Positions 30,818-50,603 of a stretch of DNA of 64,000 bases are shown here, piece after piece. A program made the position numbers and the translations under genes. The notes under the pieces were generated by a model. The model was not told where the DNA came from and made no database searches. It worked only from the letters and a program-made list of their open reading frames with translations. How positions within the stretch are numbered: position 1 is the stretch's first letter; each line of letters opens with the position of its first letter. Location of the stretch: positions 124,001 through 188,000 of the IMG/VR virus record IMGVR_UViG_3300030503_000315. One strand, written 5' to 3'.

Positions 30818-30823
30818 GGAGAA

Positions 30824-35583: not shown

Positions 35584-36015
35584 ATGAGCAATATCAAAAT
35601 CAGACCCCTGCAAGACGACGACAAGCAAGTTTGGACCATGATGCTTCTCGACTACTACCCTCCCCTCAAGGACAAATTGCAGGTGAGTTGGTGGAACGCG
35701 ATGCAAGGCGACGTGCAGTGGAACCTTGCCGAGCTAGATAATACGGTAGTCGGTTTCTCCGCAGTAGTCTTGCACTACACCGCGTTCTCGAGCGGAGAAA
35801 TAGCTTATCTGTCTGACCTCTATACGCATCCAAAATATCGAAGGATGGGAGTTGCGCGCGCCCTGCTTGAAGATGTGATTGCCACGTGCCGCACCCTAAA
35901 GTTGGAACGTGTTTATTGGAACACCGAGCATGACAATCCAGCGCGAAAATTATACGACCAGTACGCTCGAGCAGACTTCACCAGGTATCATCTTGACCTT
36001 TTCGGACCAACATGA
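35584..36015 (+). CDS. GNAT acetyltransferase
   Basis: YLSDLYTHPKYRRMGVARALL motif A; N.PARKLYD. Confidence 0.9.
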   Translation: MSNIKIRPLQDDDKQVWTMMLLDYYPPLKDKLQVSWWNAMQGDVQWNLAELDNTVVGFSAVVLHYTAFSSGEIAYLSDLYTHPKYRRMGVARALLEDVIATCRTLKLERVYWNTEHDNPARKLYDQYARADFTRYHLDLFGPT

Positions 36016-36793
36016 AGCTAGACATCGTTGATGCGTTGAACAGGATAGAGCAGTACAGACAGTTGAATCGCCCGGAACTAGAGGATCTTGAGTTTTACCA
36101 TGATGGGGCGAAGATTGAAATTCCGCCAAACCAATTGCGGGAATTTATATTCCTCGGTTTGAACAACACGGATTTTATCCGATGGTATTTTGGCAAGGAA
36201 GAGTTCTTTACTTCTCTTATGATCTACAAGAAAGGTGAAGATCAACCGGGTGATGAATCTATTGATAGCTGGATGGAGAAGAAGCATGGCGGAAAGAATG
36301 GAGATGGTGGTGAAGATGCAAGTCACAGAAGCACAGGGGCTAGCACTTCAAGCAATGTTCAAGACGTGGAATAGCTTAGCTTCGATGGGATGTTCCCGAA
36401 TGGTAGCGTTCTATGTTGATGGTGATGGAAATTTCAAACCGAAGTGTGAGGTGTCGTTTTCAGAACCGGTGCAGGATCTTACACCTGAATTAGAGAAGGC
36501 CGCCATGGTTATGAGTGAGAACGATAACCCAAGGCGTGATATTCAATTTGACTTTGATCCTATTGCGTGGAATATAAACAAGGGAAAGTAATGTGGATCC
36601 TCATTGTGACAATGATGTTCGATACCTCCGGTCCTCGTCCAGACGTGAGGTTTCAGGAATTCAGTACAGAGCAGTCTTGTAAGGACGCAGCGAATTGGAT
36701 TGCTACGGATATGAAGTACGAGATTTCGAATTCTAGTTACGCCAGTAGCAGCAATGTGCAATTTCACGTTCAGTGCAAAAAGAAATAGAAGAC

Positions 36794-36869
36794 GGTGAGA
36801 TAGCTCAGTTGGTAGAGCACCGTGTTGATAACGCGGTGGTCGCAGGTTCGAGCCCTGCTCTCACTACCA
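36794..36869 (+). tRNA. tRNA-Ile(GAT)
   Basis: Full cloverleaf, anticodon loop TT GAT AA, encoded CCA. Confidence 0.95.
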
Positions 36870-36884
36870 GTTTTATGTTTTATA

Positions 36885-36961
36885 GGGACCGTAGCTCAGT
36901 GTGATAGAGTAGTGGCCTACGAAGCCATTGGTCGGGGGTTCGAATCCCTCCGGTCCCACCA
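36885..36961 (+). tRNA. tRNA-Arg(ACG)
   Basis: Full cloverleaf, loop CT ACG AA, encoded CCA. Confidence 0.95.
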
Positions 36962-37083
36962 AATGTGCAGTTTCCGGATTCTGCCAAGTGTTGATAAAGA
37001 ACACATAAACAACACCGGTTTGATTTAAGGAGATAAGATGAAAAAGATGAGCATGTATGTAACCTCCCGATCGGATAAGATCA

Positions 37084-37548
37084 ATGGAGGTTCGAATGTC
37101 CAGAACAAAACGTTGCAAAAACTATGTCGTGGAAAACAATACGACCTGGGATCGACGGGGTAAGAAGGTAGCTTTGGAGTATACGGAAGACGATACACCG
37201 TACGAAGAAACAGGGCGCATGGTCCAGACTACCTTTTACGAAATGGTGATGAGAGGTGGAGTCACCGATTGGGTTCCCAAGGTTGGACCGAAAAGGCCGG
37301 AACGTGTTGCCCGGACGATCGAGTATCGTCCAATGGATAAGGGTGAACGTTGGTGGAAGGATCGCATGATGCATGGCGAATCTTCAACTGCTAACTCTCG
37401 TTCTCCTAGTCATTGGCATCGTCTCAACCGTCAGAAGCAAAACCGTTCGATCAACAAGCAAGAGATGTTGAAGTGGCTTAAAGCGAACGGTGAGTACGAA
37501 CCCATGTTCGAAGATAATCCCCGTGATTGTTGGTGGGATTGGTCCTGA
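37084..37548 (+). CDS. Basic hypothetical protein
   Basis: MSRT... start, Arg/Trp-rich C-terminus. Confidence 0.7.
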   Translation: MEVRMSRTKRCKNYVVENNTTWDRRGKKVALEYTEDDTPYEETGRMVQTTFYEMVMRGGVTDWVPKVGPKRPERVARTIEYRPMDKGERWWKDRMMHGESSTANSRSPSHWHRLNRQKQNRSINKQEMLKWLKANGEYEPMFEDNPRDCWWDWS

Positions 37549-37602
37549 AAATAAGGAGGCTATCATGAGTACAATCTAATCTCTAAAGAAAGGAGATGTA
37601 CT

Positions 37603-37914
37603 ATGAAAGCAAAAGCGTTTCACCACAAGGTAATAAGCTATGGTCCGGGCGGGTACAAGTGCCCGTGCTGCGGACCACACCCAAAGAAGCGTCAGGAAGA
37701 AAGACGCTTCTTGCGTCGTGCCTTCAATCGTGTCCTGGACGACATTGAGAAGGACGACGAAAGCAATATTGATTGGTATATGTTCCCGGAGTTCGATCAA
37801 CATAACTTGTGGATCGAGGCAGAAGAGAACTATTACCAATGGCTCTTGAAAGAAGGCCTTCTCGAAGACGTGTGGTGGTACAAAGAATGGTTGAAGCAGC
37901 AAGAAGAGAAGTGA
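37603..37914 (+). CDS. Small basic protein with GPGGxxCPCC motif
   Basis: AGGAG SD; YGPGGYKCPCCGP followed by Arg-rich helix. Confidence 0.75.
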   Translation: MKAKAFHHKVISYGPGGYKCPCCGPHPKKRQEERRFLRRAFNRVLDDIEKDDESNIDWYMFPEFDQHNLWIEAEENYYQWLLKEGLLEDVWWYKEWLKQQEEK

Positions 37915-37918
37915 ACGC

Positions 37919-38170
37919 CTTCCCTCCATCAATCTGTGTGGAAATCTCGGCCAGAGCGGGTTGGTGTCAGGGAAACTCCAAAGTTGACGAGCGTTAAGGA
38001 AGGACGCGCCTGATTCCTCGGTCAGGCAAGTAGCGCTGAGAGGTCCACTCGCGCTAAATCGTCAACAGCTCAACGCTGGGTGGTTACAGCCCTCCCTCTG
38101 TTGGCCCAGTGTACAGCCTGCGCTATCTACCCCCCATCAAGATTAGGTAGCGTGGGCTGTACATTTCTTT
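37919..38170 (+). ncRNA. Candidate structured ncRNA ending in terminator hairpin
   Basis: At least six helices, including a four-way junction closed by GTTGACGA/TCGTCAAC and a long terminal hairpin 38110-38163 plus T tract. Confidence 0.6.
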
Positions 38171-38223
38171 TCCATAAGAAACAGTAAATATGTGTTGTTG
38201 TTCAACTTCATAAAGGACGTAGA

Positions 38224-38595
38224 ATGAATGCCAAGCAGGTGAAGAAGATTCGCAAAGACCTCTTCAAGGAAGGTATCGACATTGCGAGTATTGTGTACTG
38301 CCAAATCGGCGGTAAGGTTTCGCAAGGTCGCATGATGTACCAGAAGGCAAAGAAAGATGCCAAGGCCTCGCCGACTATACTATCGCCGTATGCTCCTTCT
38401 CACGGTGTTGGTGTTCCTTCGGAAGGTAAGGCCTCGAAGTTCAAGGGTTTCACGAAGAAGGGTGAGAAGTGGCGCGATAACTACGGCGACACTCACCTAA
38501 TGTACGAGGAACGTCCTTACCGCCGCCTTGTCCGCGAACTCGAAGAATCGCAACGTGTAGCTAATAAGGCATTCTTGCCTAAGCAAGGAGACTAA
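38224..38595 (+). CDS. Basic hypothetical protein
   Basis: 123 aa, downstream of AGTAAATA motif. Confidence 0.7.
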   Translation: MNAKQVKKIRKDLFKEGIDIASIVYCQIGGKVSQGRMMYQKAKKDAKASPTILSPYAPSHGVGVPSEGKASKFKGFTKKGEKWRDNYGDTHLMYEERPYRRLVRELEESQRVANKAFLPKQGD

Positions 38596-38596
38596 G

Positions 38597-38965
38597 ATGC
38601 CCATTATCGCACTGTATGACAACGTAATTATTCGTCGGATAGAATCCCCGAACACGACTGCGTCTGGTCTTATCATTTCTTCTACGTCATCCCCGGATCA
38701 ATGGACAGGTGAAGTAGTTGCAACTGGTGAAGGAAAGATCCTTCAGGACGGATGTTTGTTCCCTCTAACCGTCAAAGAAGGTGATAAGGTTATCATCAGC
38801 ACTAAGTCAGAGTACCGTGCTCCTATATCGGTCGACGGTGAAGAACTTTACGCGTTCAAGGAACATGAACTAGTTGGTATCATCTATCCATATGGAACGG
38901 AATTGAATAATAGTTTCGGGATCGATGAAGAACTGGAAGACGAAGGGGAAGAGGAGGAAGAATGA
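38597..38965 (+). CDS. groES: GroES/Cpn10 co-chaperonin
   Basis: LYDNVIIRR...TASGLII...GEVVATGEG...PLTVKEGDKV. Confidence 0.85.
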   Translation: MPIIALYDNVIIRRIESPNTTASGLIISSTSSPDQWTGEVVATGEGKILQDGCLFPLTVKEGDKVIISTKSEYRAPISVDGEELYAFKEHELVGIIYPYGTELNNSFGIDEELEDEGEEEEE

Positions 38966-39187
38966 CTACTACACAGGTAGTTTGTGATCTGCTAGAAATT
39001 CGTCGATCGCTGTTTATGTGGAAGATGAACCTGGCAGCTGTGGATCGTTTGCTTCGTCACGTCGACTACGATACGACTACACTAGAGCAATACGACTTCA
39101 GCAAAGTCAACTACGAAGGCCAATCTGCGGGTTATCAGCGGGTAATCAAAGTTGACTTACTTGCTTTGTTGACCAAGTAAGTAGTAA

Positions 39188-39263
39188 GGGCCGTTAGCTC
39201 ATTGGTTAAGAGCCGGGTACTCATAATACTCAGGTGAAGGTTCGATTCCTTCACGGCCCACCA
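39188..39263 (+). tRNA. tRNA with CAT anticodon, probably Ile2 (lysidine type)
   Basis: Cloverleaf, loop CT CAT AA; C4:G69 and C5:G68; G1:C72 excludes initiator. Confidence 0.85.
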
Positions 39264-40051
39264 ACGAAGGATTGCTATGCCTTGGATACAAGAACCCTAC
39301 GCTCCTCCTGCAACACAGAAAGTCATATTCAACACCTACGATATAGATCAAGCGAACGTTTGGATGAGAATAATCCAGATGCATATCTGTGATGAGAAGT
39401 TAAGGAATAAGCCAGGAACTTTCGAGTTCGGACATATAACGTTGCACGACGTCATCCTTGTCTCATGCTGTACGGATCAGGAACCTTCTTATTTGGTTTC
39501 CAGATCTCCCAAGACAGAGATTGAACTCGCGTTCATCCACTTCCCGGAAGAAAAGAAGGTTGAGAAGACAAACTTGCTGAGGTTGATCCATGAACCACGA
39601 TAGACATCCTGTTCTTGTTTGGATCGGTGCCTACGCGGTTTGCGTGGTCTTTGCCATAGTAATGATATTCATTCTTGCGGTCATCCGTGGAGATTTTCCT
39701 TTTAAGGATAGGAGGCAGATGAGTATTCTTGCAGGATTTGTATTCACGCCGGGTTTGAATGTTCTGTACGGTATAGCTTGCATCCCATATATGTTCCTGG
39801 CCTTTGACAAGAAGATCAAATCATGATCCCGGTAGAAATTCGATGGAACCATCGAAGGAATATAAACGGTTTGATCTGGGATGGGGAAATTCATACTCTA
39901 CCACTTATCGACCATTTCATCTCAATTGAAGATGATGGTATAACTAAGAGGTATATAGTAGTTGATGTTGAGCATCAGTTGAAGCATGTAGCATTGCACG
40001 AAGAACAGAACGTTTACATTTTTGTCAAATCTCATCCTTAGTAAAACCAAT

Positions 40052-40139
40052 GCCCGGGTGGCGAAAACTGGTAGACGCATCTGGCTTAAGATCAGACGGA
40101 TGAATATCCATGAGGGTTCAAGTCCCTCCTCGGGCACCA
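40052..40139 (+). tRNA. tRNA-Leu(TAA)
   Basis: Cloverleaf with long variable arm, loop CT TAA GA, CCA. Confidence 0.95.
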
Positions 40140-40161
40140 CCTTACCTAACAGGAATTTCAA

Positions 40162-40575
40162 ATGAGCCTTAGCCTTCATTCTCAAACAATCAACATGAAG
40201 CGAACCGAGTTGATCCGTATTCTTGAGACCAACCTGGAGAAACACGTAGAAGAGTATAAGGAGGCGGTCATCAATTACCGTAAGGCATTGATGGTTGACC
40301 TGACGGAAGCTCTTCGCCAGGCTCAAGATGAGTCGTTCAATCTTAAAAAGATAAAGGTGGATTTTGTTCACCCGCAGTCACATGAATCGGATTACACTCG
40401 TGTTCTGAAGATGATGCGCCTTTCGATTGACGACACTATCGAAATAGATAATCAAGCATACGACGCATACATCGAAGATGAATGGCAATGGAAGTCGCAA
40501 TTCCGTCTGATGAACTCAACCTACGCAACTAAGGCTGCAGTGTTTGAGTCAAGCGTAGGTGGAATGATTGAGTAA
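40162..40575 (+). CDS. Conserved helical phage hypothetical protein
   Basis: N..KH..EY.EA...Y...P.SH..DY.R...M.......I.......Y..D.W.W pattern. Confidence 0.75.
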   Translation: MSLSLHSQTINMKRTELIRILETNLEKHVEEYKEAVINYRKALMVDLTEALRQAQDESFNLKKIKVDFVHPQSHESDYTRVLKMMRLSIDDTIEIDNQAYDAYIEDEWQWKSQFRLMNSTYATKAAVFESSVGGMIE

Positions 40576-40631
40576 GTAGCAAAAACATAATTATCATTTG
40601 TGACCCTTCGTTATACCTAATAGGAAAAATC

Positions 40632-41429
40632 ATGGCAAAGCTACATGAAGTGCTGGCATCGGAAAAGACAGTTACAGCCGCACGCGATCATCTGCATGAA
40701 GACACTCAGACAAAGTTTAAGAAAGCCGATCAATACTTTACAGGTATGATTAAATCCCTTAAGATGATCGAAGACTCTCCGGAAGCGGAGGCTATTGAAC
40801 AGGCAGCGAAGCAAGAGAAGGAACTCCCGACTACTCTAGTCACCACGATGGATTATTACCTTAGCTTCTGGGCTAAGGCAGAGAACCTCCTGTTTCAAAA
40901 GAACGTGACGAACACCCAAGCAGTGACCAGTCTATTATTCCGAGGCTCACTGGTTGCTGATAATGTTCCGGTTGATGAGTTGATGGGACTAGAAGTACGC
41001 ATTGGTGAATTGCGCAAACTAATTTTGGAAATGCCAACACTTGATGCTTCTAAGAATTGGGAGTTGGATTTGACTGCGCCGCAGGCTGGCACATGGAAAG
41101 CAACAAGCAATCAGGTAACGACCAAGACGGAGAAGGATGAAGTGACCGCAATTATTGTACCGGCAAATGATAAACATCCGGCACAGGTAAAGACGACCAT
41201 CAAAGACAAGGTAGTTGGTAAGTTCACATTGCAGACTTCGTCAGGCGCGACCACTGCAATTCAGAAGGCAAACATGATTGCTGCGATGGACGATTTCCTT
41301 ATCGAAGTCAAGACGGCTCGTACCCGGGCTAACTCTGTTGAGGTTGTTCCAGTTGACCCCATTGGGAATATCATCAAGGACATCCTCATGGCGTCACTGC
41401 TAGACGCACCCTCGAACAATCAGGTGTGA
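40632..41429 (+). CDS. Conserved hypothetical protein (recalled as DUF7873-like) directly upstream of large RNA
   Basis: MAKL..V.A.EK, VPV..L..LE, P.LD....W, A.DKHPAQV, SGA, VK.AR..AN..EV motifs. Confidence 0.7.
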   Translation: MAKLHEVLASEKTVTAARDHLHEDTQTKFKKADQYFTGMIKSLKMIEDSPEAEAIEQAAKQEKELPTTLVTTMDYYLSFWAKAENLLFQKNVTNTQAVTSLLFRGSLVADNVPVDELMGLEVRIGELRKLILEMPTLDASKNWELDLTAPQAGTWKATSNQVTTKTEKDEVTAIIVPANDKHPAQVKTTIKDKVVGKFTLQTSSGATTAIQKANMIAAMDDFLIEVKTARTRANSVEVVPVDPIGNIIKDILMASLLDAPSNNQV

Positions 41430-41430
41430 C

Positions 41431-41547
41431 ATGAACTGGCCGATGGCTTTTGCAATTGTTGGAGTAGTAGCTGCAGTGATGTTTGGCTCAGCAGCAAACG
41501 ATTATGTGGATAGCCCAAAGATAGCATGTACGCCGAATAGTAAATAA
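41431..41547 (+). CDS. Small membrane peptide
   Basis: 38 aa MNWPMAFAIVGVVAAVMFG... Confidence 0.5.
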   Translation: MNWPMAFAIVGVVAAVMFGSAANDYVDSPKIACTPNSK

Positions 41548-41625
41548 GTGTTGAAGGATTGTTGAAGGATTGTTGTAGCAAAACATACAGGAACAGGAAG
41601 CGTTATCATCCTCGTTAGCATCCTC

Positions 41626-41853
41626 GCCTTACGTTGGTTCGAATCCAGCCAGGCGCGCCAAGAGTTCTGCTGTATGTATACTTCATAAGATTGACATTAT
41701 CTGATTGAAGGAGAGGGCCGACGACTTCCGACAGCTCGCCCCTCATAATCCAGAAAACCTATTATGTTTCATAGCGAGTATGGAGTATGGTAGAATTCTT
41801 GACGCGCCTGTGACCCGAGAGGATAGGGCCCAGATTTCTAATCTGGTGTAGGC
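41626..41853 (+). tRNA. Circularly permuted tRNA-Arg(TCT)-like module: 3' part 41626-41660, 5' part 41804-41853
   Basis: T-arm + CAGGCGC-G-CCA upstream; GCGCCTG + D-arm + CCAGA-TTTCTAA-TCTGG downstream; acceptor strands perfectly complementary. Confidence 0.8.
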
Positions 41854-41955
41854 AATTATCGTTCTTGTATTACCTGTATGAGTTATCATAAGCAACTGCA
41901 GTATGAATCCCGTCGAGTTGCTGGCACACCCTACTGAATAGAGTGCCTAGCTAAA

Positions 41956-42519
41956 AATCAGAAGTCACGGGTTCGAATCCCGTCTCCGCCTCACTGTGTA
42001 TTATGGTATGACAAGAAAAGAGAAACGAAACTTTATCCGAGCCAATATCCAGAAAATTGGTGAATGCTGGATCTGGCAATTGAAGACGGATAGAGATGGT
42101 TACGGTTGGTATTCCTACAAAGGAAAATTGCGCCGGGCTCATAGATCCTCGTTTCACGCTTTCAAGGGAAAGATTCCAAAAGGTCTTTCTGTCTGTCATA
42201 CCTGCGACAATCCAAGCTGTGTGAGACCAAAACATCTGTTTGCGGGTACTCACAAACAAAACATGGAAGACATGGCAAAGAAGGGAAGATCTAATAAAGG
42301 CCGCCATGTTAATACCGGAGAGGCTCACGGTTATTCCGTTCTGACTGAAGAACTAGTTCTGTACATAAGAAAGGTATGTGCGGGAGGTAAATCACAGAAC
42401 TCTGTTGAAAGAGAACTTGGTTTATCCTCTGGACTTGTTAACAAGGTGGTCAGAAGAAAGCTTTGGACGCACATTTAGTATACAGTGAGGCGGAGTATCT
42501 CAGTGGTAGAGGTCTGATT
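41956..42519 (+). tRNA. Circularly permuted Cys-like tRNA module split at the anticodon loop: 3' half 41956-41993, 5' half 42489-42519
   Basis: AA-TCAGA-AGTC-ACGGG-TTCGAAT-CCCGT-CTCCGCC-T upstream; GGCGGAG-TA-TCTC-AGTGGTA-GAGG-TCTGA-TT downstream. Confidence 0.75.
42008..42478 (+). CDS. HNH homing endonuclease
   Basis: CWIW...GYG...AHR....F...IP.GL.VCHTCDNP.CVRP.HL..GT...N..D; C-terminal HTH-like segment. Confidence 0.93.
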   Translation: MTRKEKRNFIRANIQKIGECWIWQLKTDRDGYGWYSYKGKLRRAHRSSFHAFKGKIPKGLSVCHTCDNPSCVRPKHLFAGTHKQNMEDMAKKGRSNKGRHVNTGEAHGYSVLTEELVLYIRKVCAGGKSQNSVERELGLSSGLVNKVVRRKLWTHI

Positions 42520-42664
42520 CTATTCCTTATCGTAACTAACTCGAATGTGGTGGAAAGTGTGGTTGGGATTAATATCCAAAGTTCCAGGCAGGAGTCGGAT
42601 AAGACAAATGTTCTGGAACTTCCTAAAGAGTTTTCCACGAGAGCTCTTTAGAAAGACAAACAAG

Positions 42665-42695
42665 AAGGCTACCAATTTCGGTTGGTAGCCTTTTT
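42665..42695 (+). terminator. Intrinsic terminator
   Basis: AAGGCTACCAA/TTGGTAGCCTT stem plus T tract. Confidence 0.85.
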
Positions 42696-42829
42696 CTATC
42701 TTCGCCTACAGGGTTTTGAGCAAATTTCATGGGGATTGTGTCGAGGACACGACACTGAAACCTAAGGAGCTTTCCATGGCGTTACTCACACGTCTTTGCT
42801 CAACCTTGCTCACCCTGTACAGGAAGATC

Positions 42830-44020
42830 ATGCATCGCTTTGAAACACCTAGCAACAATGCGCCCGTAGTCAAGAGGGACTATCCGCGCGTCCTTTTCGT
42901 ACTTAAGTATCGAGATGGATACAGTCCGTATTCTTACTCTGAGTCATCGGGATCGGGAGACTCCACCGGCTCTGGAGATTGGGGAGACGGCGGACCTAAA
43001 CGTCCTCTTTCATCTGGCTTGTTCAACTCTGCCCGCATGGTTGTTGAAATGCTCGAGCAGAATCGCGTGCCGGTTAAGTTGGTTCATGTTATCGACAACA
43101 ACTTCATCCACCGTGAGATCGTTGCGTTCAAACCTGACATTGTAGTCATCGAAGCCTTCTGGGTTGTTCCGGATAAGTTTGATGAGCTGCGTCGCGTTTG
43201 CCCGAATGTTACCTTCATTATCCGCAACCACTCTGAAGTCCCATTCCTGGCTCAGGAAGGCATCGCATTTGATTGGATGCTTCGCTATATCAAGAAGCCG
43301 AATGTAATCATGAGTGCCAATTCGCAGAGGATGAACAGAGAAACCCGCGAGCTCGCACTAGTTGCTAATCCGGACATGGACATCCTCGAAGTGACGAGGA
43401 AGACTCCGTACCTTCCTAACTACTATCAGATGCCGCAAGCATTGATGGGTGACGGTGGGTGCATTGATCCGGATAGTGACACTATAGATATCGGTTGCTT
43501 CGGTGCAGTTCGCCCCTTGAAGAATCAGTTGCTGCAAGCTATCGCAGCAATCGAATTCGCAAATCATTTGGGTAAGAAATTGCGTTTCCATATAAACGGC
43601 AAACGTATCGAGATGAATGGTGGACAGGTTATCAAGAATCTTGTTTCCCTGTTCTCACACTATCCACAGTATGAATTGGTTAACCACGCATGGATGCAAC
43701 ACTCGGAGTTCAAGGAGCTGATTGCCTCAATGGATATAGTGATGCAGGTGTCTTTCAGTGAGACGTTCAATATCGTTGCTGCGGATGCAATCAGCAATGG
43801 TGTTGTTACTATCACTAGTCCTGAGATTCGTTGGAGCTCGCCACAACTTCAGGCGGATCCCACGAGTTCGGAAAGTATATTCGATACACTGGTCAAGGCT
43901 TGGTTACGTAAGGTCGAAAATCCTGATTGGAATCCTAATCTCGCGGGCTTGGTTCATTACAATAGTAAGTCGGTTGAAGTGTGGCTAGACTACCTGACAA
44001 ATTTTCGAAAATCAAAGTAA
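42830..44020 (+). CDS. Glycosyltransferase (GT-B, GT4-like)
   Basis: FGAVRPLKNQ, QVSFSETFNIVAADA; start trimmed to MHRFE. Confidence 0.8.
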   Translation: MHRFETPSNNAPVVKRDYPRVLFVLKYRDGYSPYSYSESSGSGDSTGSGDWGDGGPKRPLSSGLFNSARMVVEMLEQNRVPVKLVHVIDNNFIHREIVAFKPDIVVIEAFWVVPDKFDELRRVCPNVTFIIRNHSEVPFLAQEGIAFDWMLRYIKKPNVIMSANSQRMNRETRELALVANPDMDILEVTRKTPYLPNYYQMPQALMGDGGCIDPDSDTIDIGCFGAVRPLKNQLLQAIAAIEFANHLGKKLRFHINGKRIEMNGGQVIKNLVSLFSHYPQYELVNHAWMQHSEFKELIASMDIVMQVSFSETFNIVAADAISNGVVTITSPEIRWSSPQLQADPTSSESIFDTLVKAWLRKVENPDWNPNLAGLVHYNSKSVEVWLDYLTNFRKSK

Positions 44021-44041
44021 GGCATAGTAGGGGCAACCGAG

Positions 44042-45058
44042 ATGAAAACAAATTCCAGTACTCGACTTCAGGCTTCAGAAGGTTGGTGGGACGCCTTAAC
44101 TTCCGAACAAAAGAAACTGTACATAAAACAGCACCCGAACTCCAAGTATGCGAAAGATCCTATTGGTGAGGATGAAGAAGCACCGGAAGAAAAAGCTCCT
44201 GAGGAACACGAGGAAAGTCCGACTGAAGATACCCATGAGGAATCGGAAGAGAGTCATGAAGTCGAAGAGGTAAAGGACGAGCATCGCAAATCGGTTGCGG
44301 ATACACTGCGTAAGCTGGGCCCGAAGGTCGCTAAAACCATCAAGCATAAGTTTGCTAAAATCGGTATAGCGGGCGCAGCACTCAAACGCATTGCAGCAGG
44401 ACAAGAGCTAGAAGAGGAACACAAGGAGACACTACGTGAACTAGGTTCCTTCACCCTCAAAACATTGAGCTCTCACGTAACGGGTTCTCCAGAGTTAAGC
44501 AAGGTCATTGCTCGCGTGGGTACTACCGCGGTAGAGCATGCGATTGAGAAGTTCAAAGAACATAAAGAAAAGAGCGGCAAGGATGATATCGATACCTTCG
44601 TGGATGGTGTTGCGGAAGGGCTCGAGAAAGCAGAGGTAAAGAAGGACGACAAGGAAGAGACTTCGATCAAATCGATCGGCAACCATATCAAGAAATCAAC
44701 GAACCATATCGTTGATGTTTTAAACAAGTCGTTCCAACATATAAAACCTGCAACGGAAGGTCTGAAGAACCTGGTGCAGGGTAAGCCACTGGATGATGAG
44801 CATAAGGCCGCAATGAAAGGCTTAGGAAAAATTGCCCTAGCTACATCTGTCGCTACGCTGCCTGGTGGTCTTGCGGTACATATAACAGCTAGCATAGGTG
44901 GTGCCGCACTCATTCATGCATTCAAGAAAATGAAGGCGTTCAAGTCTCAAGGGCATGAGCATGGTATCCTCCACCACTTTGTCGAGTCTATAGGTGAAGG
45001 CCTGGAAGATGCATTACTTGAGCACGCAGCAGAAGGTCCTGAACACCTGCACGAATAG
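44042..45058 (+). CDS. Hypothetical protein (possible virion protein) with internal repeat
   Basis: WWDALT.EQ...YIKQHPNSKYA motif; two similar helical segments (L..GQELEEEHK / L..GKPLDDEHK; FVDGVAEGLE / FVESIGEGLE). Confidence 0.7.
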   Translation: MKTNSSTRLQASEGWWDALTSEQKKLYIKQHPNSKYAKDPIGEDEEAPEEKAPEEHEESPTEDTHEESEESHEVEEVKDEHRKSVADTLRKLGPKVAKTIKHKFAKIGIAGAALKRIAAGQELEEEHKETLRELGSFTLKTLSSHVTGSPELSKVIARVGTTAVEHAIEKFKEHKEKSGKDDIDTFVDGVAEGLEKAEVKKDDKEETSIKSIGNHIKKSTNHIVDVLNKSFQHIKPATEGLKNLVQGKPLDDEHKAAMKGLGKIALATSVATLPGGLAVHITASIGGAALIHAFKKMKAFKSQGHEHGILHHFVESIGEGLEDALLEHAAEGPEHLHE

Positions 45059-45087
45059 TAAATACATAAAAAGGAGGGCCTACCTAC

Positions 45088-45702
45088 ATGACATTTTCTT
45101 CAGAGAAATTACCGGATACGATTTTGGTGTTGATTGATATCGACGATCCGATCACTTATGACAAAGAGTTTCAACGTCAGCTAAGGTATAGCCCTTACAT
45201 AGCTGGCGGATCAGAGATGTCACCTCGCAGTCGAAAGATGATTCGAAGCCGAAAGGAATCACCTGACGAGTTGTTCGTCCATAAGTTCATTGTCGAAGTG
45301 ATGGTTGATAAGCTGGGAGACTTTGCAGTATTCTTTCTCGCCAATCCAATGACCCAACGATCATTGATCTTCCGTAAGCTGCATTGGTCTGGTCCTGACA
45401 TCGAGGATATTCCCGATGAAGTCTTGAAAGAGATGGAAGAACATGGTGCGGACCCAGAAGAATATCTCATGGAAGAACAGGAGTTGACGCATATCTATGA
45501 GTTCACTTCAGGCGCTGCATTGATGCTTCACGACTCAGATGATCTTGATGACTACTCTGGCGATCCGGATGATGAAGATGGTGGATCAGGTCCTGTCAAG
45601 GTTGCAAGAAATAGAAATGTGGATATAGTAGAGTCCGATGAGAACAAAGAAGAGGACGAAGACGATGCATTCGTAGTCCCTACAAACAAAACGGTTCATT
45701 AA
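45088..45702 (+). CDS. Acidic hypothetical protein
   Basis: 204 aa, AGGAGG SD. Confidence 0.75.
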   Translation: MTFSSEKLPDTILVLIDIDDPITYDKEFQRQLRYSPYIAGGSEMSPRSRKMIRSRKESPDELFVHKFIVEVMVDKLGDFAVFFLANPMTQRSLIFRKLHWSGPDIEDIPDEVLKEMEEHGADPEEYLMEEQELTHIYEFTSGAALMLHDSDDLDDYSGDPDDEDGGSGPVKVARNRNVDIVESDENKEEDEDDAFVVPTNKTVH

Positions 45703-45709
45703 GTACTAT

Positions 45710-45750
45710 AGGGTACGACATAGTAAATAATGTCGTACCCTTTTCTTTCT
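45710..45750 (+). terminator. Terminator hairpin whose loop is the AGTAAATA promoter motif
   Basis: AGGGTACGACAT-AGTAAATA-ATGTCGTACCCT-TTTCTTT. Confidence 0.75.
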
Positions 45751-45758
45751 TCGGAGAC

Positions 45759-46334
45759 GTGATGCGAACCTGGTGTGCAATCGATTTAGAAACTCTAAGC
45801 CTTAAGCAATCTACATGTCCGATTCTTAGCCTTGGCGCTGTTTCCTATAGTTTTGAGGAAGGGATAACTGCAGAGTTCCATGAATTCTTTAATGTAGACG
45901 AGCAGTTCAAGTTAGGTCGTCTACCTCAGTGGAAGACCATCCAATGGTGGCTAAAGCAATCGGATGATGCACGCACGCCCATGTCTGGGGAACGGAAAGA
46001 TACGCTTACTGTGGATGAGATGACGGATGAATTCTATGAGTGGTGGGATGAGGAGGTAGGAACTCCAGCCCAACATTGGGCGGAAGATTTCGATTACAAG
46101 CTAGGAGCCCGAGCCATATCGAATGGCTCAAACTTCGACATCGCTATACTCGAATCCCTGTTCGATGAAGTGCCTTGGCATTTCAGGAATACACGTTGCT
46201 ATCGTTCAATGATTGATTGGTTCCCCGCACCAGTTCAACCACGTCAGACAATCAAACACGATGCCTTGCAAGATGCAATATACCAGGCGAAGGTCCATTT
46301 GAATTTAATGGTTTCGAATGAAAATCTGAGGTGA
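45759..46334 (+). CDS. DEDDh 3'-5' exonuclease (Rv2179c-like)
   Basis: IDLETL, NGSNFDIAIL, HDALQDA. Confidence 0.88.
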   Translation: MMRTWCAIDLETLSLKQSTCPILSLGAVSYSFEEGITAEFHEFFNVDEQFKLGRLPQWKTIQWWLKQSDDARTPMSGERKDTLTVDEMTDEFYEWWDEEVGTPAQHWAEDFDYKLGARAISNGSNFDIAILESLFDEVPWHFRNTRCYRSMIDWFPAPVQPRQTIKHDALQDAIYQAKVHLNLMVSNENLR

Positions 46335-46609: not shown

Positions 46610-47146
46610 ATGAACAACACAATGAGTAAGATCCTATTCATGGATATCGATGGAGTACTTAACTCCAGACGATCCGAGATCGCGCACGCGGCTGGCTTCC
46701 TACCCAGCCCAAACTCTCCTTGGCAGGAACAACTTCCTCGCGCATTCCAGGATATCGATTGGATTGCCGTTGGGATGATTCATGTTCTCTGCACCAGGCT
46801 AGACGCAAAGATTGTCATAAGCTCAAGCTGGCGCGCAAACTACAAGCCGGAACAGTTGGCTAAGTACTTCAACTTACCAATGATTATCGATGCCACGGAT
46901 CAGTTGGAAAGTAATCGTGGTGGCCAGATTCAGCGATGGCTGAATGCCCATCCTGAAGTCACCCAGTATGCAATCGTGGATGACAACTCAGGGATGCTTG
47001 AATCACAGGCAGATCATTTTGTGCAGGTGGATTGGGACGAGGGTTTGACATATAAAGACTGTTCTCGTCTGCGTGATATCCTTCAGGGCATCTTTGCACC
47101 TCAACCTCGTAATCCTGCACGGTTCATTCTCTTTGACGAGATCTAA
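46610..47146 (+). CDS. HAD-family phosphatase (Swiss Army Knife RNA-repair type)
   Basis: FMDIDGVLN, IVISSSWR, RG..I..WL, YAIVDD. Confidence 0.85.
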   Translation: MNNTMSKILFMDIDGVLNSRRSEIAHAAGFLPSPNSPWQEQLPRAFQDIDWIAVGMIHVLCTRLDAKIVISSSWRANYKPEQLAKYFNLPMIIDATDQLESNRGGQIQRWLNAHPEVTQYAIVDDNSGMLESQADHFVQVDWDEGLTYKDCSRLRDILQGIFAPQPRNPARFILFDEI

Positions 47147-48277: not shown

Positions 48278-50602
48278 ATGCTCGAGAGTCAGTTTTCCTT
48301 TAATCCTTCCTACATTTCAGATGATAAGAATCCCTATAATCTGAAGCTCAAGAGGGACGTCAATTGGTCAACATCTAATCGGCGTCTTCTTGTCATCTTC
48401 CAAACCATTGATGGACGAGACCTAAAGTCAGGGGAATTACTGACGGGCGATGTAGGAAAAACATTCCAACGCGTCTATAAGTATGCAAGAAAGATAGCCA
48501 ACAACTACCTAGACAATCAGACGCCTTTGTATTCTGTAGCTGTAGCGAATTTCGGCGCGTATCGTCATCTACACCTTAAGGGTAGCAGGCGTTCGGACGC
48601 AGAAGCGCAATTCGCCGAGCGTGTCCATGATCTCATAAAGAAGATCAAGCCAACGCACATCCTGGTCGCTGGCGACAACGCAATGATCGCACTATACCCT
48701 AAGATAAAGGATCCTCAATATAAGAAGGGTTGGGTCCACAAGATCAAGGTAGATGATGAAGTAGTGAAAGTAGTCTCTACCGTAGACTACTCCCGTCTTC
48801 TCGAGAAGCATGGAGTTTATGCAAATCTTCTTGGACTGTTTAGCCGCCATCTAGCGTTCTTGATGATGGGCCGCAATCCACATAATCTTTCGCAGATCAA
48901 GTTGGATGCGAGGTACATCAAAACGATTGCAGAGTTCGATCAGTTGATGCACAAGTTCGATACGGCGACTGAGGTTGCAATCGATACGGAGACTCGCAAT
49001 CTCTCTGTGCTACACAACAAGATCTATACGATTCAGTTTGCAACAAATCACAACAAGGAAGTCGGATATGTCCTTGTTCTCGATCACCCTCAGGCGCATT
49101 GGGATTCGAAAGAACGAAAGTATATCAAGTCGGAGTTGAGGAAACGATTCGGAGCGAAGACGGGACCAACTCTAATCACCTTCAATGGTTTCATGTTTGA
49201 CCTGCACGTTATCCGGGTGGCTTTGAAGCTTCCCATCATCTGGCTAAAGGTGTGGGAGATCATGTTCGCAGAGCATTTGTTGGATGAGAACGTATCCTTG
49301 CAGAACGATATCTCATCTACTGTGGATCAACGTTCAGGTAAGATGTCAAAGTATGGGGGCTTGAACCCCATCTTCTGCTCATATGGCAACTCGCATTATC
49401 TTGATGCAGTCTTTGGTAAGGAAGAGCGGGGATCTATCGGCGCTATCGATCCCTCGCGCAAGGATGCAGTAGAGTATATGGCAATGGATACGGTGTCTAT
49501 CCTTAACATGCGGGATCAGGAAATTGCCAGAGCAGAGCATATGGATATCGAAGGGAAGAACTACAAGCCTTTCTTTATTCGACATATGAAGCATCAGATG
49601 TCAGATGCAGCGCATGCGATGTCACAAATGCGTCAGGATGGATCCTTCATAGATATCAAATATCTGAGCTATCTGTTGTCGAAGCAATCTCCATTGCGTC
49701 AGGAACTAAAACGCGTTGAGAAGCAGATGTTTGAGTGGAAAGAAGTGCAGCAAGCCAATAAAGAACTTCTAGGAACAACGGGGTTCAAGGCAGGGTCACT
49801 ATTCTCCAGAGCTATTGGGACGGCAACGAATTGGATCTTCAAGCTGAGTAAGCCAGACCATAAGAAGAAGTTGTTTATAGATATCATGGAACTTGAACCC
49901 GTCAACAAGACGGCGACAGGTGAAGATGCAATTGACAAAGACTTCATCGCCCACTACAAGGACACGAACAAAATTGTCGCTCTGTACGGGGATCACCAGG
50001 GTTTATCAAAACTTATCTCGACCTATGTTAAGGGATGGCGTAGGATACTAACAAACAATGTCGATGCTATCACTGATCTCTGTTTACGTGCAGCGTATTT
50101 CATAGTTGATACAGGTCGACTGGGATCCAATAAGCCGAACCTTCAACAGATTCCATCGCGTGGAAAGTCAGCCAAGTCTATAAAACGTTCATTCGTAGCT
50201 GAGCCCGGTCGCATTCCAATCCAGTTCGACTATTCAGCACACGAAGTGCGAATGTGGTCTGTTGCATCAAACGATTTGAATCTTGCAGCGGTGTTCAAGA
50301 TAGGCCAGAAGCTAAGGAAGATGTATGTTAAAAATCCTACAGACGAACTCAAGGCGCGTATCAAAACGGAAGGAGACGTACACATTCTTAACGTTAAACG
50401 AATCTTCGGTAAGATCGTTGACAAGGCGCACCCGCTCCGATACGCGATCAAGGCGGTTATCTTTGGCCTTATCTACGGAAAAAGTGCGAAGTCGCTAGGT
50501 GAAGATACAAAGCAGGCAGAGATCGAAGAAGTTAGAGAGAAGCTCTCGGAACTATACAACGAGAAGCTAGATCTTCAGGCAGCTCTAAAGAAGGCAGCAT
50601 GA
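48278..50602 (+). CDS. polA: Family A DNA polymerase, N-terminal part (UDG-like domain, 3'-5' exonuclease, motifs A and B)
   Basis: AIDTET, FN..FD, Y.A.D exo motifs; TGRLGS..PNLQQIP; DYSAHEVR; RYAIKAVIFGLIYG. Confidence 0.9.
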   Translation: MLESQFSFNPSYISDDKNPYNLKLKRDVNWSTSNRRLLVIFQTIDGRDLKSGELLTGDVGKTFQRVYKYARKIANNYLDNQTPLYSVAVANFGAYRHLHLKGSRRSDAEAQFAERVHDLIKKIKPTHILVAGDNAMIALYPKIKDPQYKKGWVHKIKVDDEVVKVVSTVDYSRLLEKHGVYANLLGLFSRHLAFLMMGRNPHNLSQIKLDARYIKTIAEFDQLMHKFDTATEVAIDTETRNLSVLHNKIYTIQFATNHNKEVGYVLVLDHPQAHWDSKERKYIKSELRKRFGAKTGPTLITFNGFMFDLHVIRVALKLPIIWLKVWEIMFAEHLLDENVSLQNDISSTVDQRSGKMSKYGGLNPIFCSYGNSHYLDAVFGKEERGSIGAIDPSRKDAVEYMAMDTVSILNMRDQEIARAEHMDIEGKNYKPFFIRHMKHQMSDAAHAMSQMRQDGSFIDIKYLSYLLSKQSPLRQELKRVEKQMFEWKEVQQANKELLGTTGFKAGSLFSRAIGTATNWIFKLSKPDHKKKLFIDIMELEPVNKTATGEDAIDKDFIAHYKDTNKIVALYGDHQGLSKLISTYVKGWRRILTNNVDAITDLCLRAAYFIVDTGRLGSNKPNLQQIPSRGKSAKSIKRSFVAEPGRIPIQFDYSAHEVRMWSVASNDLNLAAVFKIGQKLRKMYVKNPTDELKARIKTEGDVHILNVKRIFGKIVDKAHPLRYAIKAVIFGLIYGKSAKSLGEDTKQAEIEEVREKLSELYNEKLDLQAALKKAA

Positions 50603-50603
50603 T

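What the first reader, a model, noticed from the sequence alone, without database searches (positions are those of the whole stretch)
41956..42519. Second permuted tRNA split at the anticodon, with no clear anticodon
Seen: 3' half AA-TCAGA-AGTC-T arm-CTCCGCC-T (41956-41991) precedes 5' half GGCGGAG-D arm-TCTGA-TT (42489-42519). G1-G2-C3, U73 and GATT/AATC flanks resemble tRNA-Cys (GATT GCA AATC), but GCA is absent and CCA is not encoded. Flanking bases could supply CTA (amber), CAA or AAA only if the ends were ligated. The 3'half-insert-5'half layout is the same topology as engineered permuted intron-exon constructs that yield circular RNA. Inference: either an anticodon-less tRNA mimic (decoy for anticodon nucleases or a processing handle) or a substrate for circularisation.
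Basis: partly seen in the sequence, partly recalled or inferred. Interest (0 to 1): 0.85.

Follow-up and report, generated by a model that had tools for sequence, protein, structure and literature searches.

The report
tRNA-shaped domain of a phage RNA
The two "tRNA halves" are real, but they form an anticodon-less tRNA-shaped domain inside a large conserved phage non-coding RNA that always follows one gene of unknown function, and in this phage a homing-endonuclease gene has lodged in one of its loops.

Summary
A tRNA 3' half lies at 41956-41991 and a matching 5' half at 42489-42519, with an intact HNH endonuclease gene between them.

It is not a permuted tRNA gene awaiting circularisation. 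The acceptor stem continues into a 12-13 bp helix that closes it. The HNH gene sits in the apical loop of that helix. The closest relative (L040) has a 36-nt hairpin there and no HNH gene.

The "anticodon" stem opens into conserved helices of a larger structured RNA, about 41550-42697. That RNA also holds a second acceptor-closed tRNA-like module, X, at 41633-41846.

Six relatives give 64 pairs, 44 with compensatory changes. Of the pair cells, 95.8% are paired, against 73% in shuffles.

The layout (T arm, closed acceptor, D arm, closing stem) matches bacterial Y RNA-like YrlA. Rfam scores are 25-38 bits; an authentic mycobacteriophage YrlA scores 32.5. The Ro60-binding motif and a Ro60 gene are absent.

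Instead, every phage checked that carries DUF7873 has one or two such modules just downstream of that gene, and none occur elsewhere in 222 kb.

Best reading: a Ro60-independent tRNA-mimic RNA, probably partnered with the DUF7873 protein. This is a new variant of a known kind; its function is unproven.

The parts
40632..41429 (+). DUF7873 gene (265 aa), the conserved upstream neighbour and candidate protein partner of the RNA
   Evidence: Pfam PF25283, E 1.6e-53. Every DUF7873-bearing phage checked has the RNA modules downstream of this gene.
41539..41547 (+). Promoter-like phage motif AGTAAATAA just upstream of the RNA
   Evidence: The motif occurs 9 times in the window against 0.72 expected, mostly just upstream of ORFs. 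It is also present upstream of the RNA in phiRSL1 and other relatives (alignment). The role as a promoter is inferred.
41593..41597 (+). Module X closing helix, 5' strand (ACAGG)
   Evidence: Pairs with 41873-77. It covaries across 7 phages (ACAGG/CCUGU, UAGGG/CCCUA, AUGGG/CCCAU, AGAGG/CCUCU).
41633..41649 (+). Module X T arm (GUUGG-UUCGAAU-CCAGC)
   Evidence: T stem paired in 25/25 cells.
41650..41670 (+). Module X acceptor 3' strand (followed by GCCA) plus extension helix, 5' arm
   Evidence: Inverted repeat I2. 20/21 positions paired with 41790-41810. Extension paired in 61/65 cells across 5 phages.
41671..41789 (+). Module X cap insert (extra domain at the tip of the closed acceptor)
   Evidence: The cap is 142-152 nt in the window, L040, L043 and L029, but 27-32 nt in phiRSL1, L041, L042, L031 and L033.
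41790..41810 (+). Module X extension helix 3' arm plus acceptor 5' strand (GCGCCUG)
41811..41846 (+). Module X D arm and anticodon-arm-like hairpin (CCAGA-UUUCUAA-UCUGG)
   Evidence: The hairpin stem covaries (CCGGA/UCCGG in L041). Its loop is not conserved: GCGA in L033, and no hairpin in L029.
41855..41877 (+). Conserved 3'-side motif AUUAUCGUUCUUGUAUUA, then the X closing helix 3' strand (CCUGU, 41873-77)
41893..41900 (+). Module Y outer closing helix, 5' strand (CAACUGCA)
   Evidence: Pairs with 42558-65, 8/8 in the window. This is helix 1 of A5, 95.8% paired, with 4 pairs changed on both sides.
41908..41919 (+). Module Y helix P2, 5' strand (..CGAGUU)
   Evidence: Pairs with 42538-51. Covariation: CGAGUU/AACUCG, CAAGUU/AACUUG, UAGGUU/AACCUA, CACCCU/AGGGUG. 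10 of 13 pairs are changed on both sides.
41920..41951 (+). Hairpin H on the 5' side of the Y junction (stem GCUGGCAC/GUGCCUAGC with one bulge)
   Evidence: Helix 3 of A5: 8 pairs, 6 with compensatory change. The window pairing was read from the sequence, because the MAFFT register was poor there.
41956..41983 (+). Module Y: 3' strand of the anticodon-type stem (41956-61), variable region AAGUC, T arm (41967-83)
   Evidence: The stem is 6/6 paired with 42514-19, and all 6 pairs covary.
41984..42003 (+). Module Y acceptor 3' strand (CUCCGCC, then U73, no CCA) plus 12-nt extension helix, 5' arm
   Evidence: Inverted repeat I1, 20 nt at 90%. 19/19 aligned pairs in the window. Helix 6 of A5: 20 pairs, 15 compensatory.
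41996..42478 (+). Intact HNH homing-endonuclease ORF (160 aa from GTG; in-frame ATG at 42008), in the apical loop of the Y acceptor-cap hairpin
   Evidence: Pfam HNH_3, E 6e-12. PHROG endonuclease families, up to E 5e-32. Absent from the same loop in all relatives, where the cap is 25-37 nt.
42476..42495 (+). Module Y extension helix 3' arm (includes the HNH stop codon) plus acceptor 5' strand GGCGGAG
42496..42519 (+). Module Y: U8-A9, D arm (42498-512), U26, 5' strand of the anticodon-type stem (42514-19)
42520..42537 (+). Conserved unpaired 3'-side strand containing UUAUCGUAAC (42527-36)
   Evidence: Conserved in the window, L040-L042, phiRSL1 and L029, slightly changed in L043 (UCUUCGUCAC), and recognisable in Rhizobium phage TM30.
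42538..42565 (+). 3' strands of helix P2 (42538-51) and of the outer closing helix (42558-65)
42566..42655 (+). Three conserved 3' hairpins (42566-77; 42578-90/42609-22, with a conserved loop; 42619-35/42639-55)
   Evidence: (I3, I17). The stems covary between phages.
42662..42697 (+). Terminator-like hairpin followed by UUUUUCU; likely 3' end of the RNA
   Evidence: Inverted repeat I5, 14 nt at 93% and the sequence. An equivalent hairpin plus T run is seen in L029.

Best explanation
SHOWN. The two halves are the two sides of one tRNA-shaped domain, module Y. Its acceptor end is closed by a helix and its anticodon end is open. Module Y is the second of two such domains (X and Y) in one large conserved structured RNA, about 41550-42697 on the + strand, encoded directly downstream of a DUF7873 gene. 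In this phage alone, a free-standing HNH homing-endonuclease gene has inserted into the apical loop of Y's acceptor-cap hairpin. All helices are left intact.

INFERRED. The RNA is not decoded and not circularised. It works as a tRNA mimic of the bacterial Y RNA (YrlA) type. The D/T-loop elbow and closed acceptor helix present a tRNA-like surface to proteins that recognise tRNA. The closing stems and the conserved single-stranded AUCGU-containing strands bind a dedicated partner.

Ro60 and its binding motif are absent, and the RNA is always next to DUF7873. The most likely partner is therefore the DUF7873 protein, forming a phage ribonucleoprotein that acts in tRNA or RNA metabolism, or in tRNA-centred phage-host conflict. 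The locus sits in the phage's tRNA region, about 3-4 kb upstream of an Rv2179c-like exoribonuclease gene and an RNA-repair-type HAD gene.

The HNH gene is a selfish passenger. It is transcribed with the RNA and tolerated because it occupies a peripheral loop, as homing-endonuclease genes do in group I intron loops.
For: - Anatomy and extended inverted repeats.
- The same two-module layout without the HNH gene: phiRSL1, four IMG/VR phages and six further contigs. This includes the closest relative, L040 (73% DUF7873 identity), whose Y cap is 36 nt.
- Covariation: acceptors paired in 35/35 cells with 2-3 pair types per position. For the Y unit, 64 pairs, 44 with changes on both sides, 95.8% of cells paired against 73.1% in shuffles (0/500) and 33-45% in slid controls. 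The window fits all helices.
- G-U pairs are frequent, which indicates pairing in + strand RNA.
- The phiRSL1 RNA folds with a z-score of -7.95.
- Rfam YrlA, with full-length model alignments of identical topology: 35.3 and 33.6 bits (L033 Y and X), 32 (phiRSL1), 37.9 (Klebsiella FBKp24), 35.9 (Rhizobium TM30). The authentic Ro60-linked YrlA of mycobacteriophage Bxz1 scores 32.5 bits.
- DUF7873 linkage: 31 modules in the 19 DUF7873 loci scanned, each on the same strand just downstream of the gene, and none elsewhere in 222 kb scanned on both strands. Hosts span Proteobacteria, Actinobacteria and Cyanobacteria.
- HNH ORF intact.
- Neighbouring RNA-metabolism genes.
- Published YrlA properties (tRNA-like T, acceptor and D elements; modification by TruB and DusA; RNase P cleavage of the 7-bp-acceptor form): PMC4201824.
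Against: - No expression data. The transcript ends, its unity as a single RNA and its processing are inferred from a promoter-like motif and a terminator-like hairpin.
- DUF7873 binding is inferred from gene linkage only. Its AlphaFold model (pLDDT 83.9) matches no known RNA-binding fold. It has no PDB, PHROG or NCBIfam match.
- DUF7873 always lies inside tRNA gene clusters. Part of the linkage could reflect shared genomic neighbourhood rather than physical partnership.
- The YrlA scores are below Rfam's gathering score (69 bits).
- NCCA follows the acceptor 3' strand in about half of all modules (my tally). This hints at processing at the acceptor, which the closed-acceptor picture does not require.
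Confidence: 0.7

Rival explanations
1. A two-piece tRNA-like RNA. RNase P cuts at the 5' end of the acceptor and 3' trimming removes the cap (here, the whole HNH segment). This leaves two RNA pieces held together by the acceptor and anticodon-type stems, with a free tRNA-like 3' end. Two-piece (permuted) tmRNA and M. smegmatis YrlA are made this way. In this phage, the same cuts would also release the HNH mRNA.
For: - All modules have a 7-bp acceptor, the main RNase P determinant. M. smegmatis YrlA, which has a 7-bp acceptor, is cleaved by RNase P and carries CCA in vivo (PMC4201824).
- NCCA follows the acceptor 3' strand in about 16 of 33 modules, where about 0.5 would be expected by chance. 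This includes window X (GCCA), FBKp24 X and Y, D505, Y1_11 and GodonK (my tally).
- Rfam beta_tmRNA and permuted-tmRNA models give partial hits to the T arm-acceptor-cap segment.
Against: - In the window's clade, module Y has lost CCA: UCAC, UCCU, UCAG, GCCG, GCCU, GCCC.
- Its acceptor continues without a break into a 12-13 bp covarying helix. By general knowledge of RNase P substrates, this would hinder cleavage. It also argues that the closed form is the selected one.
- Nothing here shows cleavage.
Confidence: 0.2
2. A cis-acting mRNA element rather than a trans-acting RNA. It would be a tRNA-like 3' UTR or punctuation structure that stabilises or processes the DUF7873 mRNA, or the transcripts of the tRNA cluster.
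For: The RNA is always immediately downstream of DUF7873, on the same strand. tRNA-like structures are known processing signals (general knowledge: the mitochondrial punctuation model; MALAT1 mascRNA).
Against: - The RNA is 450-650 nt, with two modules, closing helices, extra hairpins and conserved single-stranded motifs. That is far more than a processing handle needs.
- A hairpin follows the DUF7873 stop codon in phiRSL1 and L033, and a promoter-like motif lies between the gene and the RNA.
- In L029, a homing-endonuclease gene separates DUF7873 from the RNA.
Confidence: 0.08
3. One reading: a circularly permuted tRNA gene, or a natural permuted intron-exon unit. Its ends would be joined at the anticodon loop, by ligation or self-splicing, to give a functional or circular tRNA.
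For: The gene order (3' half before 5' half) and the perfect complementarity of the acceptor and anticodon stems. RNA-repair-type genes lie nearby.
Against: - No 7-nt anticodon loop can be assembled.
- The flanks of the stem are strands of conserved covarying helices (P2, hairpin H) and a conserved unpaired strand. They are not splice sites.
- No group I intron match at E<=10.
- No bulge-helix-bulge motif.
- The acceptor is closed and lacks CCA.
- Acceptor identity elements are not conserved.
- No RNA ligase was found among the window ORFs scanned.
Confidence: 0.03
4. Non-functional debris or a DNA-level feature. Either degenerate remnants of two tandem tRNA copies rearranged by the homing endonuclease, or terminal inverted repeats of a mobile HNH element.
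For: A homing endonuclease lies between the halves. A 10-nt direct repeat, GAAUCCCGUC, occurs at 41905 and 41975. Homing endonucleases are common in these tRNA regions.
Against: The same halves with compensatory changes occur in about 19 phage lineages, almost all without any HNH gene between them. G-U pairs and strand-specific occurrence indicate RNA-level selection.
Confidence: 0.02

Closest known systems
YrlA, the bacterial and phage Y RNA-like tRNA mimic (Rfam RF02553; Chen et al. 2014, PMC4201824)
   Same: The order of elements is the same: closing stem, anticodon-type stem, variable region, T arm, acceptor closed as a stem-loop, D arm, closing stem. The tRNA tertiary-contact nucleotides are kept. 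It occurs in large phages, with two related RNAs in tandem. The Rfam model aligns over its full length, with scores equal to those of an authentic mycobacteriophage YrlA.
   Different: - No GNCGAAN0-1G Ro60-binding motif at a conserved place.
- No Ro60/TROVE gene in the window, and none detectable by tblastn in phiRSL1, FBKp24 or the Rhizobium phages.
- Linked instead to DUF7873.
- The Y unit is about 230 nt, part of a 450-650 nt multi-domain RNA, against 80-130 nt for YrlA.
- A full 7-bp acceptor extended by a 12-13 bp helix.
- Different conserved single-stranded motifs (AUCGU).
Two-piece (circularly permuted) tmRNA of alpha- and beta-proteobacteria and cyanobacteria
   Same: The gene order is T arm, acceptor 3' strand, (N)CCA, intervening segment, acceptor 5' strand. 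The Rfam beta_tmRNA and tmRNA_permuted models match that segment.
   Different: No G3-U70 pair, no tag reading frame and no pseudoknots were detected. ARAGORN finds no tmRNA. Our modules have a complete D stem and an anticodon-type stem, which tmRNA lacks. The window's module Y has no CCA.
Permuted tRNA genes of Cyanidioschyzon merolae and some archaea
   Same: The 3' half is encoded upstream of the 5' half on the same strand.
   Different: Those genes yield complete tRNAs with anticodons. A bulge-helix-bulge motif, the splicing endonuclease and a circular intermediate are involved (general knowledge). Here there is no anticodon loop and no such motif, the acceptor is closed, and the open end is built into a larger RNA.
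Homing-endonuclease genes in peripheral loops of group I introns
   Same: A selfish endonuclease ORF sits in a terminal loop of a structured RNA, without disturbing its helices. Its start and stop codons lie inside the closing helix.
   Different: The host RNA is not an intron or a ribozyme, as far as can be seen (no Rfam intron match). The HNH gene is of the free-standing HNH_3 type.

Membership tests
Functional or permuted tRNA gene | After joining the halves, a complete cloverleaf with a 7-nt anticodon loop (U33, anticodon, purine 37) | tested here: not met
   No loop is encoded. The bases next to the stem belong to conserved helices and a conserved unpaired strand. ARAGORN and Rfam tRNA do not call it.
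Functional or permuted tRNA gene | A junction motif for end-joining (bulge-helix-bulge, or flanking intron halves) | tested here: not met
   The consensus structure shows a multi-helix junction instead. No group I intron hit at E<=10.
Functional or permuted tRNA gene | Free acceptor ends with a single-stranded NCCA 3' end | tested here: inconclusive
   The window's module Y has UCAC, and the acceptor continues as a helix. About half of the related modules do keep NCCA. Processing cannot be tested in silico.
YrlA / bacterial Y RNA (RF02553) | tRNA-like domain: T arm, acceptor stem-loop and D arm in that order, with tRNA tertiary-contact nucleotides | tested here: met
   Full-length alignments to the Rfam model.
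YrlA / bacterial Y RNA (RF02553) | A closing stem formed by sequences 5' and 3' of the tRNA-like domain | tested here: met
   Outer helix and P2: 21 pairs, 14 with compensatory changes. The window fits.
YrlA / bacterial Y RNA (RF02553) | The GNCGAAN0-1G motif near the 5' end (presumed Ro60 contact) | tested here: not met
   A regular-expression scan of 11 homologous RNAs found no occurrence at a conserved position, and none at all in the window or phiRSL1.
YrlA / bacterial Y RNA (RF02553) | Encoded within about 4 kb of a Ro60/TROVE gene on the same strand | tested here: not met
   No TROVE domain was found in any of the 41 window ORFs scanned. A tblastn search with Bxz1 Ro60 finds 356 phage records, none from Ralstonia, Klebsiella or Rhizobium phages. 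The rest of this 215-kb genome outside the window was not examined.
YrlA / bacterial Y RNA (RF02553) | Score at or above the Rfam gathering threshold (69 bits) | tested here: inconclusive
   Relatives score 25-38 bits. The published Ro60-linked YrlA of phage Bxz1 scores 32.5 bits, so the threshold does not separate phage members from non-members. Module Y in the window itself cannot be scored, because of the 472-nt insert.
Two-piece (permuted) tmRNA | A tag reading frame with a resume codon, pseudoknots, and a G3-U70 alanine identity pair | tested here: not met
   No tmRNA from ARAGORN. Rfam tmRNA models match only about 60 nt. The 3:70 pairs are Watson-Crick and variable.
Group I intron (permuted intron-exon) | Catalytic core halves flanking the exons | tested here: not met
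   No Intron_gpI match in 36000-46000 at E<=10, or in relatives.
HNH homing endonuclease (the ORF only) | HNH_3 catalytic domain in an intact ORF, sporadically present at a conserved site | tested here: met
   Pfam and PHROG hits. Present only in the window among all homologous loci. Cleavage activity was not tested.

The most novel reading that the evidence does not exclude
DUF7873 and the downstream acceptor-closed tRNA-like RNA form a previously unrecognised, widespread phage ribonucleoprotein. It would be a Ro60-independent analogue of the Ro60-Y RNA particle, found in phages of Proteobacteria, Actinobacteria and Cyanobacteria. It would use tRNA mimicry to protect, repair or regulate the phage tRNA pool, or to decoy host tRNA-targeting defences.
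Probability: 0.35. Interest if true: 0.8.

Novelty: new variant of a known kind. Interest (0 to 1): 0.62.

Why it matters
Phage tRNA regions are usually annotated gene by gene. This RNA is unannotated in every record examined, and sometimes miscalled: as a suppressor tRNA in Klebsiella phage FBKp24, and as tRNA-Asp by ARAGORN in L005.

If the DUF7873 link reflects a physical complex, three things follow:
- It gives a function to a widespread domain of unknown function.
- It extends tRNA-mimicking Y-like RNAs beyond Ro60.
- It adds a new player to the tRNA-centred conflicts between phages and bacterial defence systems.

The locus also shows a homing endonuclease living in a loop of a non-intron structured RNA. 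Finally, it warns that apparent "permuted" or "split" tRNAs in phages may be acceptor-closed mimics.

Tried and rejected
- **Group I intron or permuted intron-exon reading.** Rfam scans at E<=10 gave nothing.
- **Pattern GTATTACC..TAAGCAA in viral contigs.** It gave 24 loci, but 18 were chance hits in coding DNA.
- **Metagenome scan with the DUF7873 alignment.** It returned only the same phage. blastn of the RNA against 50,697 phage genomes found only phiRSL1 itself.
- **A tmRNA-like tag.** The codons UAU-CGU-AAC-stop are conserved in three close relatives, but the frame is not kept in L031 or L033, and the bases are explained by RNA pairing and a conserved motif.
- **My by-eye pairing GAAUAGA/UCUAUUC (41937-43 with 42519-25).** The comparative consensus does not support it.
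- **A sigma-70-like promoter inside the X cap (41768-96).** Such sites are no more frequent than in shuffled sequence.
- **DUF7873 function.** There is no PDB sequence match and no fold match in PDB or BFVD. PHROG, NCBIfam and the literature also give nothing. DUF7873 is absent from the Ro60 region of Bxz1.
- **Not done.** No covariance model of my own was built. The strict module finder and Rfam YrlA were sufficient, and the 472-nt insert prevents scoring of the window copy.
Full report
**1. The observation**

The region was read directly. From 41956 the + strand carries, in order:
- AAUCAG (41956-61)
- a five-base variable region, AAGUC
- a canonical T arm, ACGGG-UUCGAAU-CCCGU (41967-83)
- CUCCGCC (41984-90)
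- U, with no CCA after it

After an ORF, the strand carries GGCGGAG (42489-95), UA, a canonical D arm UCUC-AGUGGUA-GAGG (42498-512), U, and CUGAUU (42514-19).

The acceptor and anticodon-type stems are perfectly complementary. The nucleotides that make tRNA tertiary contacts are present: U8, A14, G15:C48, G18G19, G46 and the T loop. No anticodon loop exists. ARAGORN and Rfam at gathering threshold see only four ordinary tRNAs, at 36794-40139.

The ORF between the halves (41996-42478) is an intact HNH_3 homing endonuclease.

The complementarity continues 12-13 bp beyond the acceptor (41984-42003 with 42476-42495, 20 nt, 90%). A second element upstream has the same property (41650-68 with 41792-810). 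That element, module X, has a T arm and acceptor 3' strand followed by GCCA (41633-60). After 147 nt come the acceptor 5' strand, a D arm and a complete anticodon-arm-like hairpin (41804-46).

**2. Relatives**

The window is part of IMG/VR contig 3300030503_000315, a 215-kb jumbo phage. Its nearest named relative is Ralstonia phage phiRSL1.

In phiRSL1, the unannotated gap after ORF270 contains the same two modules in the same order. ORF270 is the homologue of the DUF7873 gene that lies upstream of our locus. Both phiRSL1 acceptors are closed by hairpins of only 30-31 nt, and there is no HNH gene.

More homologues came from three routes:
- DNA patterns
- a DUF7873 alignment used against viral contigs
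- exact-protein look-ups of DUF7873 relatives

All of them have module X, module Y or both. The closest relative, L040 (73% DUF7873 identity), has a 36-nt cap on Y. The HNH gene is therefore an insertion specific to this phage, sitting in the apical loop of the cap hairpin. Its start and stop codons lie within the closing helix.

**3. Structure and covariation**

Across five phages, both T stems (25/25 cells) and both acceptors (35/35 cells) are always paired, although the acceptor sequences are entirely different.

A seven-sequence alignment with RNAalifold, and the tool's own alignment of six Y units, give one architecture:
- an outer closing helix
- helix P2
- a side hairpin H
- the anticodon-type stem
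- the T arm
- the acceptor plus cap helix
- the D arm

Counting pairs on that structure gives the following:

| Measure | Observed | Control |
|---|---|---|
| Cells forming standard pairs | 95.8% | 73.1% in shuffles (0 of 500 reach the observed value); 33-45% when partners are slid |
| Pairs with changes on both sides | 44 of 64 | 21 expected |

Many G-U pairs show that the + strand RNA is what is selected.

The window fits every helix. Module X is likewise enclosed by a covarying helix (41593-97 with 41873-77). Downstream of Y lie three more conserved hairpins and a terminator-like hairpin with a U run (42662-97). A phage motif, AGTAAATAR, lies at 41539; it occurs 9 times in the window against 0.72 expected. 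The phiRSL1 RNA is far more stable than shuffled sequence (z = -7.95).

The two "halves" are therefore one domain of an RNA of about 650 nt, or about 1150 nt with the HNH insert.

**4. What it resembles**

Rfam searched by E-value aligns the YrlA (Y RNA-like) model over its full length to both modules:
- L033 Y 35.3 bits and L033 X 33.6 bits
- phiRSL1 Y 32 bits
- partial alignments in L029 and L031

The model's consensus has exactly this topology: stem, T arm, closed acceptor, D arm, stem.

These scores are below the gathering score of 69. However, the published, Ro60-linked YrlA of mycobacteriophage Bxz1 reaches only 32.5 bits in the same test.

According to Chen et al. 2014 (PMC4201824):
- YrlA RNAs mimic the tRNA T arm, acceptor and D arm.
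- They are modified by TruB and DusA.
- They carry a GNCGAAN0-1G motif thought to contact Ro60.
- They lie within 4 kb of a Ro60 gene.
- The M. smegmatis member, which has a 7-bp acceptor, is cut by RNase P and carries CCA.

Our RNAs lack the motif at any conserved position. No TROVE protein was found among the window ORFs scanned. A tblastn search with Bxz1 Ro60 finds 356 phage genomes, but none from Ralstonia, Klebsiella or Rhizobium phages.

Partial hits to permuted tmRNA models reflect only the T arm-acceptor-cap segment. No tag, pseudoknots or G3-U70 pair are present.

**5. The DUF7873 link**

The RNA follows a DUF7873 gene in every close relative, so I examined distant DUF7873 phages:
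- Klebsiella FBKp24
- Rhizobium RHph_TM30 and Y1_11
- Vibrio D505
- Gordonia GodonK and Ronaldo
- Arthrobacter Racecar
- Pseudanabaena Pam2

Each has one or two acceptor-closed modules 100-450 nt downstream, on the same strand. The Rfam YrlA scores there are 37.9 and 35.9 bits.

A strict module finder, run over 222 kb of held sequence on both strands, found 31 modules. All are at that position and none elsewhere, despite many ordinary tRNA genes nearby.

DUF7873 has no PHROG, NCBIfam, PDB or literature match. Its confident AlphaFold model (pLDDT 83.9) has no fold match. The partnership is therefore inferred from linkage alone.

About 3-4 kb downstream in the window lie an Rv2179c-like 3'-5' exoribonuclease gene and a HAD domain of the RNA-repair "Swiss Army Knife" type. 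These are suggestive context only.

**6. Mechanism**

*Shown:*
- a conserved, folded, strand-specific RNA with two tRNA-shaped, acceptor-closed domains
- linkage to DUF7873
- an HNH gene inserted in a peripheral loop

*Inferred:*
- The RNA acts as a tRNA mimic of the Y RNA kind. It offers the tRNA elbow to tRNA-recognising factors.
- Its closing stems and conserved AUCGU-containing strands bind a dedicated protein, most likely DUF7873.
- The HNH gene is a tolerated selfish passenger.

An open sub-question is whether the acceptor is cut. NCCA follows the acceptor 3' strand in about half of all modules, including window X. That favours RNase P-type processing in some members. Module Y of the window's clade has lost CCA and has a long covarying cap helix, which favours the closed form there.

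**7. Verdict**

The "anticodon-less tRNA mimic" alternative is supported. The permuted-tRNA, circularisation and tRNA-Cys readings are not.

This is a new variant of a known kind (YrlA-like tRNA mimics). It is distinguished by the absence of Ro60, its obligate DUF7873 neighbour, its two-module multi-domain size, and, in this phage, a homing endonuclease nested in the acceptor cap.

Noticed in passing
It consists of a T arm, acceptor 3' strand plus GCCA, a 147-nt cap, the acceptor 5' strand, a D arm and a full anticodon-arm-like hairpin with loop UUUCUAA. It is opened at the variable region rather than at the anticodon. In several relatives its D arm looks like that of tRNA-Leu, a class II tRNA with a long variable arm.
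   Followed up: yes
L036 4518-4597 (Klebsiella phage FBKp24, NC_061421); L005 4368-4452 (- strand): The annotated 'tRNA-Sup-TTA' of FBKp24 ends in the T arm, acceptor 3' strand and ACCA of module Y. ARAGORN likewise calls a 'tRNA-Asp(atc)' that uses the T arm of module X in L005. Both look like miscalls of the tRNA-like RNA, not real suppressor or decoding tRNAs.
   Followed up: partly
L028 5566-5689 (phiRSL1, unannotated, between ORF269 and ORF268); L031 5796-5930 and 1220-1344: tRNA-like genes that score 35-45 bits on the Rfam tRNA model but span 124-135 nt. They appear to carry a 50-60 nt insert in the anticodon loop. They could be intron-containing tRNAs or a further kind of tRNA-scaffolded RNA.
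   Followed up: no
window 2578, 11864, 26521, 26722, 35548, 41539, 45722, 54501, 61017: The motif AGTAAATAR occurs 9 times against 0.72 expected by chance, mostly just upstream of ORF starts. It is probably a phage-specific promoter or other expression signal.
   Followed up: partly
window 42578-42622; L002 7258-7299 (phiRSL1): A conserved hairpin downstream of Y. In most relatives its loop reads AGGAG-N6-AUG, like a ribosome-binding site plus start codon. In phiRSL1 it contains the annotated start of ORF269 (81 aa). In the window the AUG is replaced. It is unclear whether a small peptide is encoded or only an RNA motif is conserved.
   Followed up: partly
window 41671-41789; L029 5808-5927; also L040 and L043: The cap of module X carries an extra segment of about 120 nt, with conserved ends (CUGUAUG... 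...GAGUAUGG) and an internal hairpin, in some phages but not in others (phiRSL1, L041, L042).
   Followed up: partly
window 45759-46334 and 46610-47146: An Rv2179c-like 3'-5' exoribonuclease and a HAD domain of the 'Swiss Army Knife' RNA-repair type lie side by side, 3-4 kb downstream of the RNA. In L033, an ORF whose N-terminus (MEEIKIVGLDIETLS...) looks like a DEDD-type exonuclease starts about 330 nt after the RNA; this was read by eye only.
   Followed up: no
window 26851-32347: A PrkA kinase, DUF444 (YeaH-like) and SpoVR-like gene trio, normally a bacterial stress or sporulation-associated operon, is encoded by this phage.
   Followed up: no
window 48278-51521: The family A DNA polymerase appears split into two adjacent ORFs (774 aa and 305 aa). 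The polymerase domain continues from one ORF into the other.
   Followed up: no
L029 5064-5713 (= L005, - strand): A homing-endonuclease-like ORF with repeated NUMOD3-type motifs (recognised by eye) lies between the DUF7873 gene and the RNA in this relative. Homing endonucleases also interrupt the tRNA clusters of Rhizobium phage TM30 and Gordonia phage GodonK.
   Followed up: no
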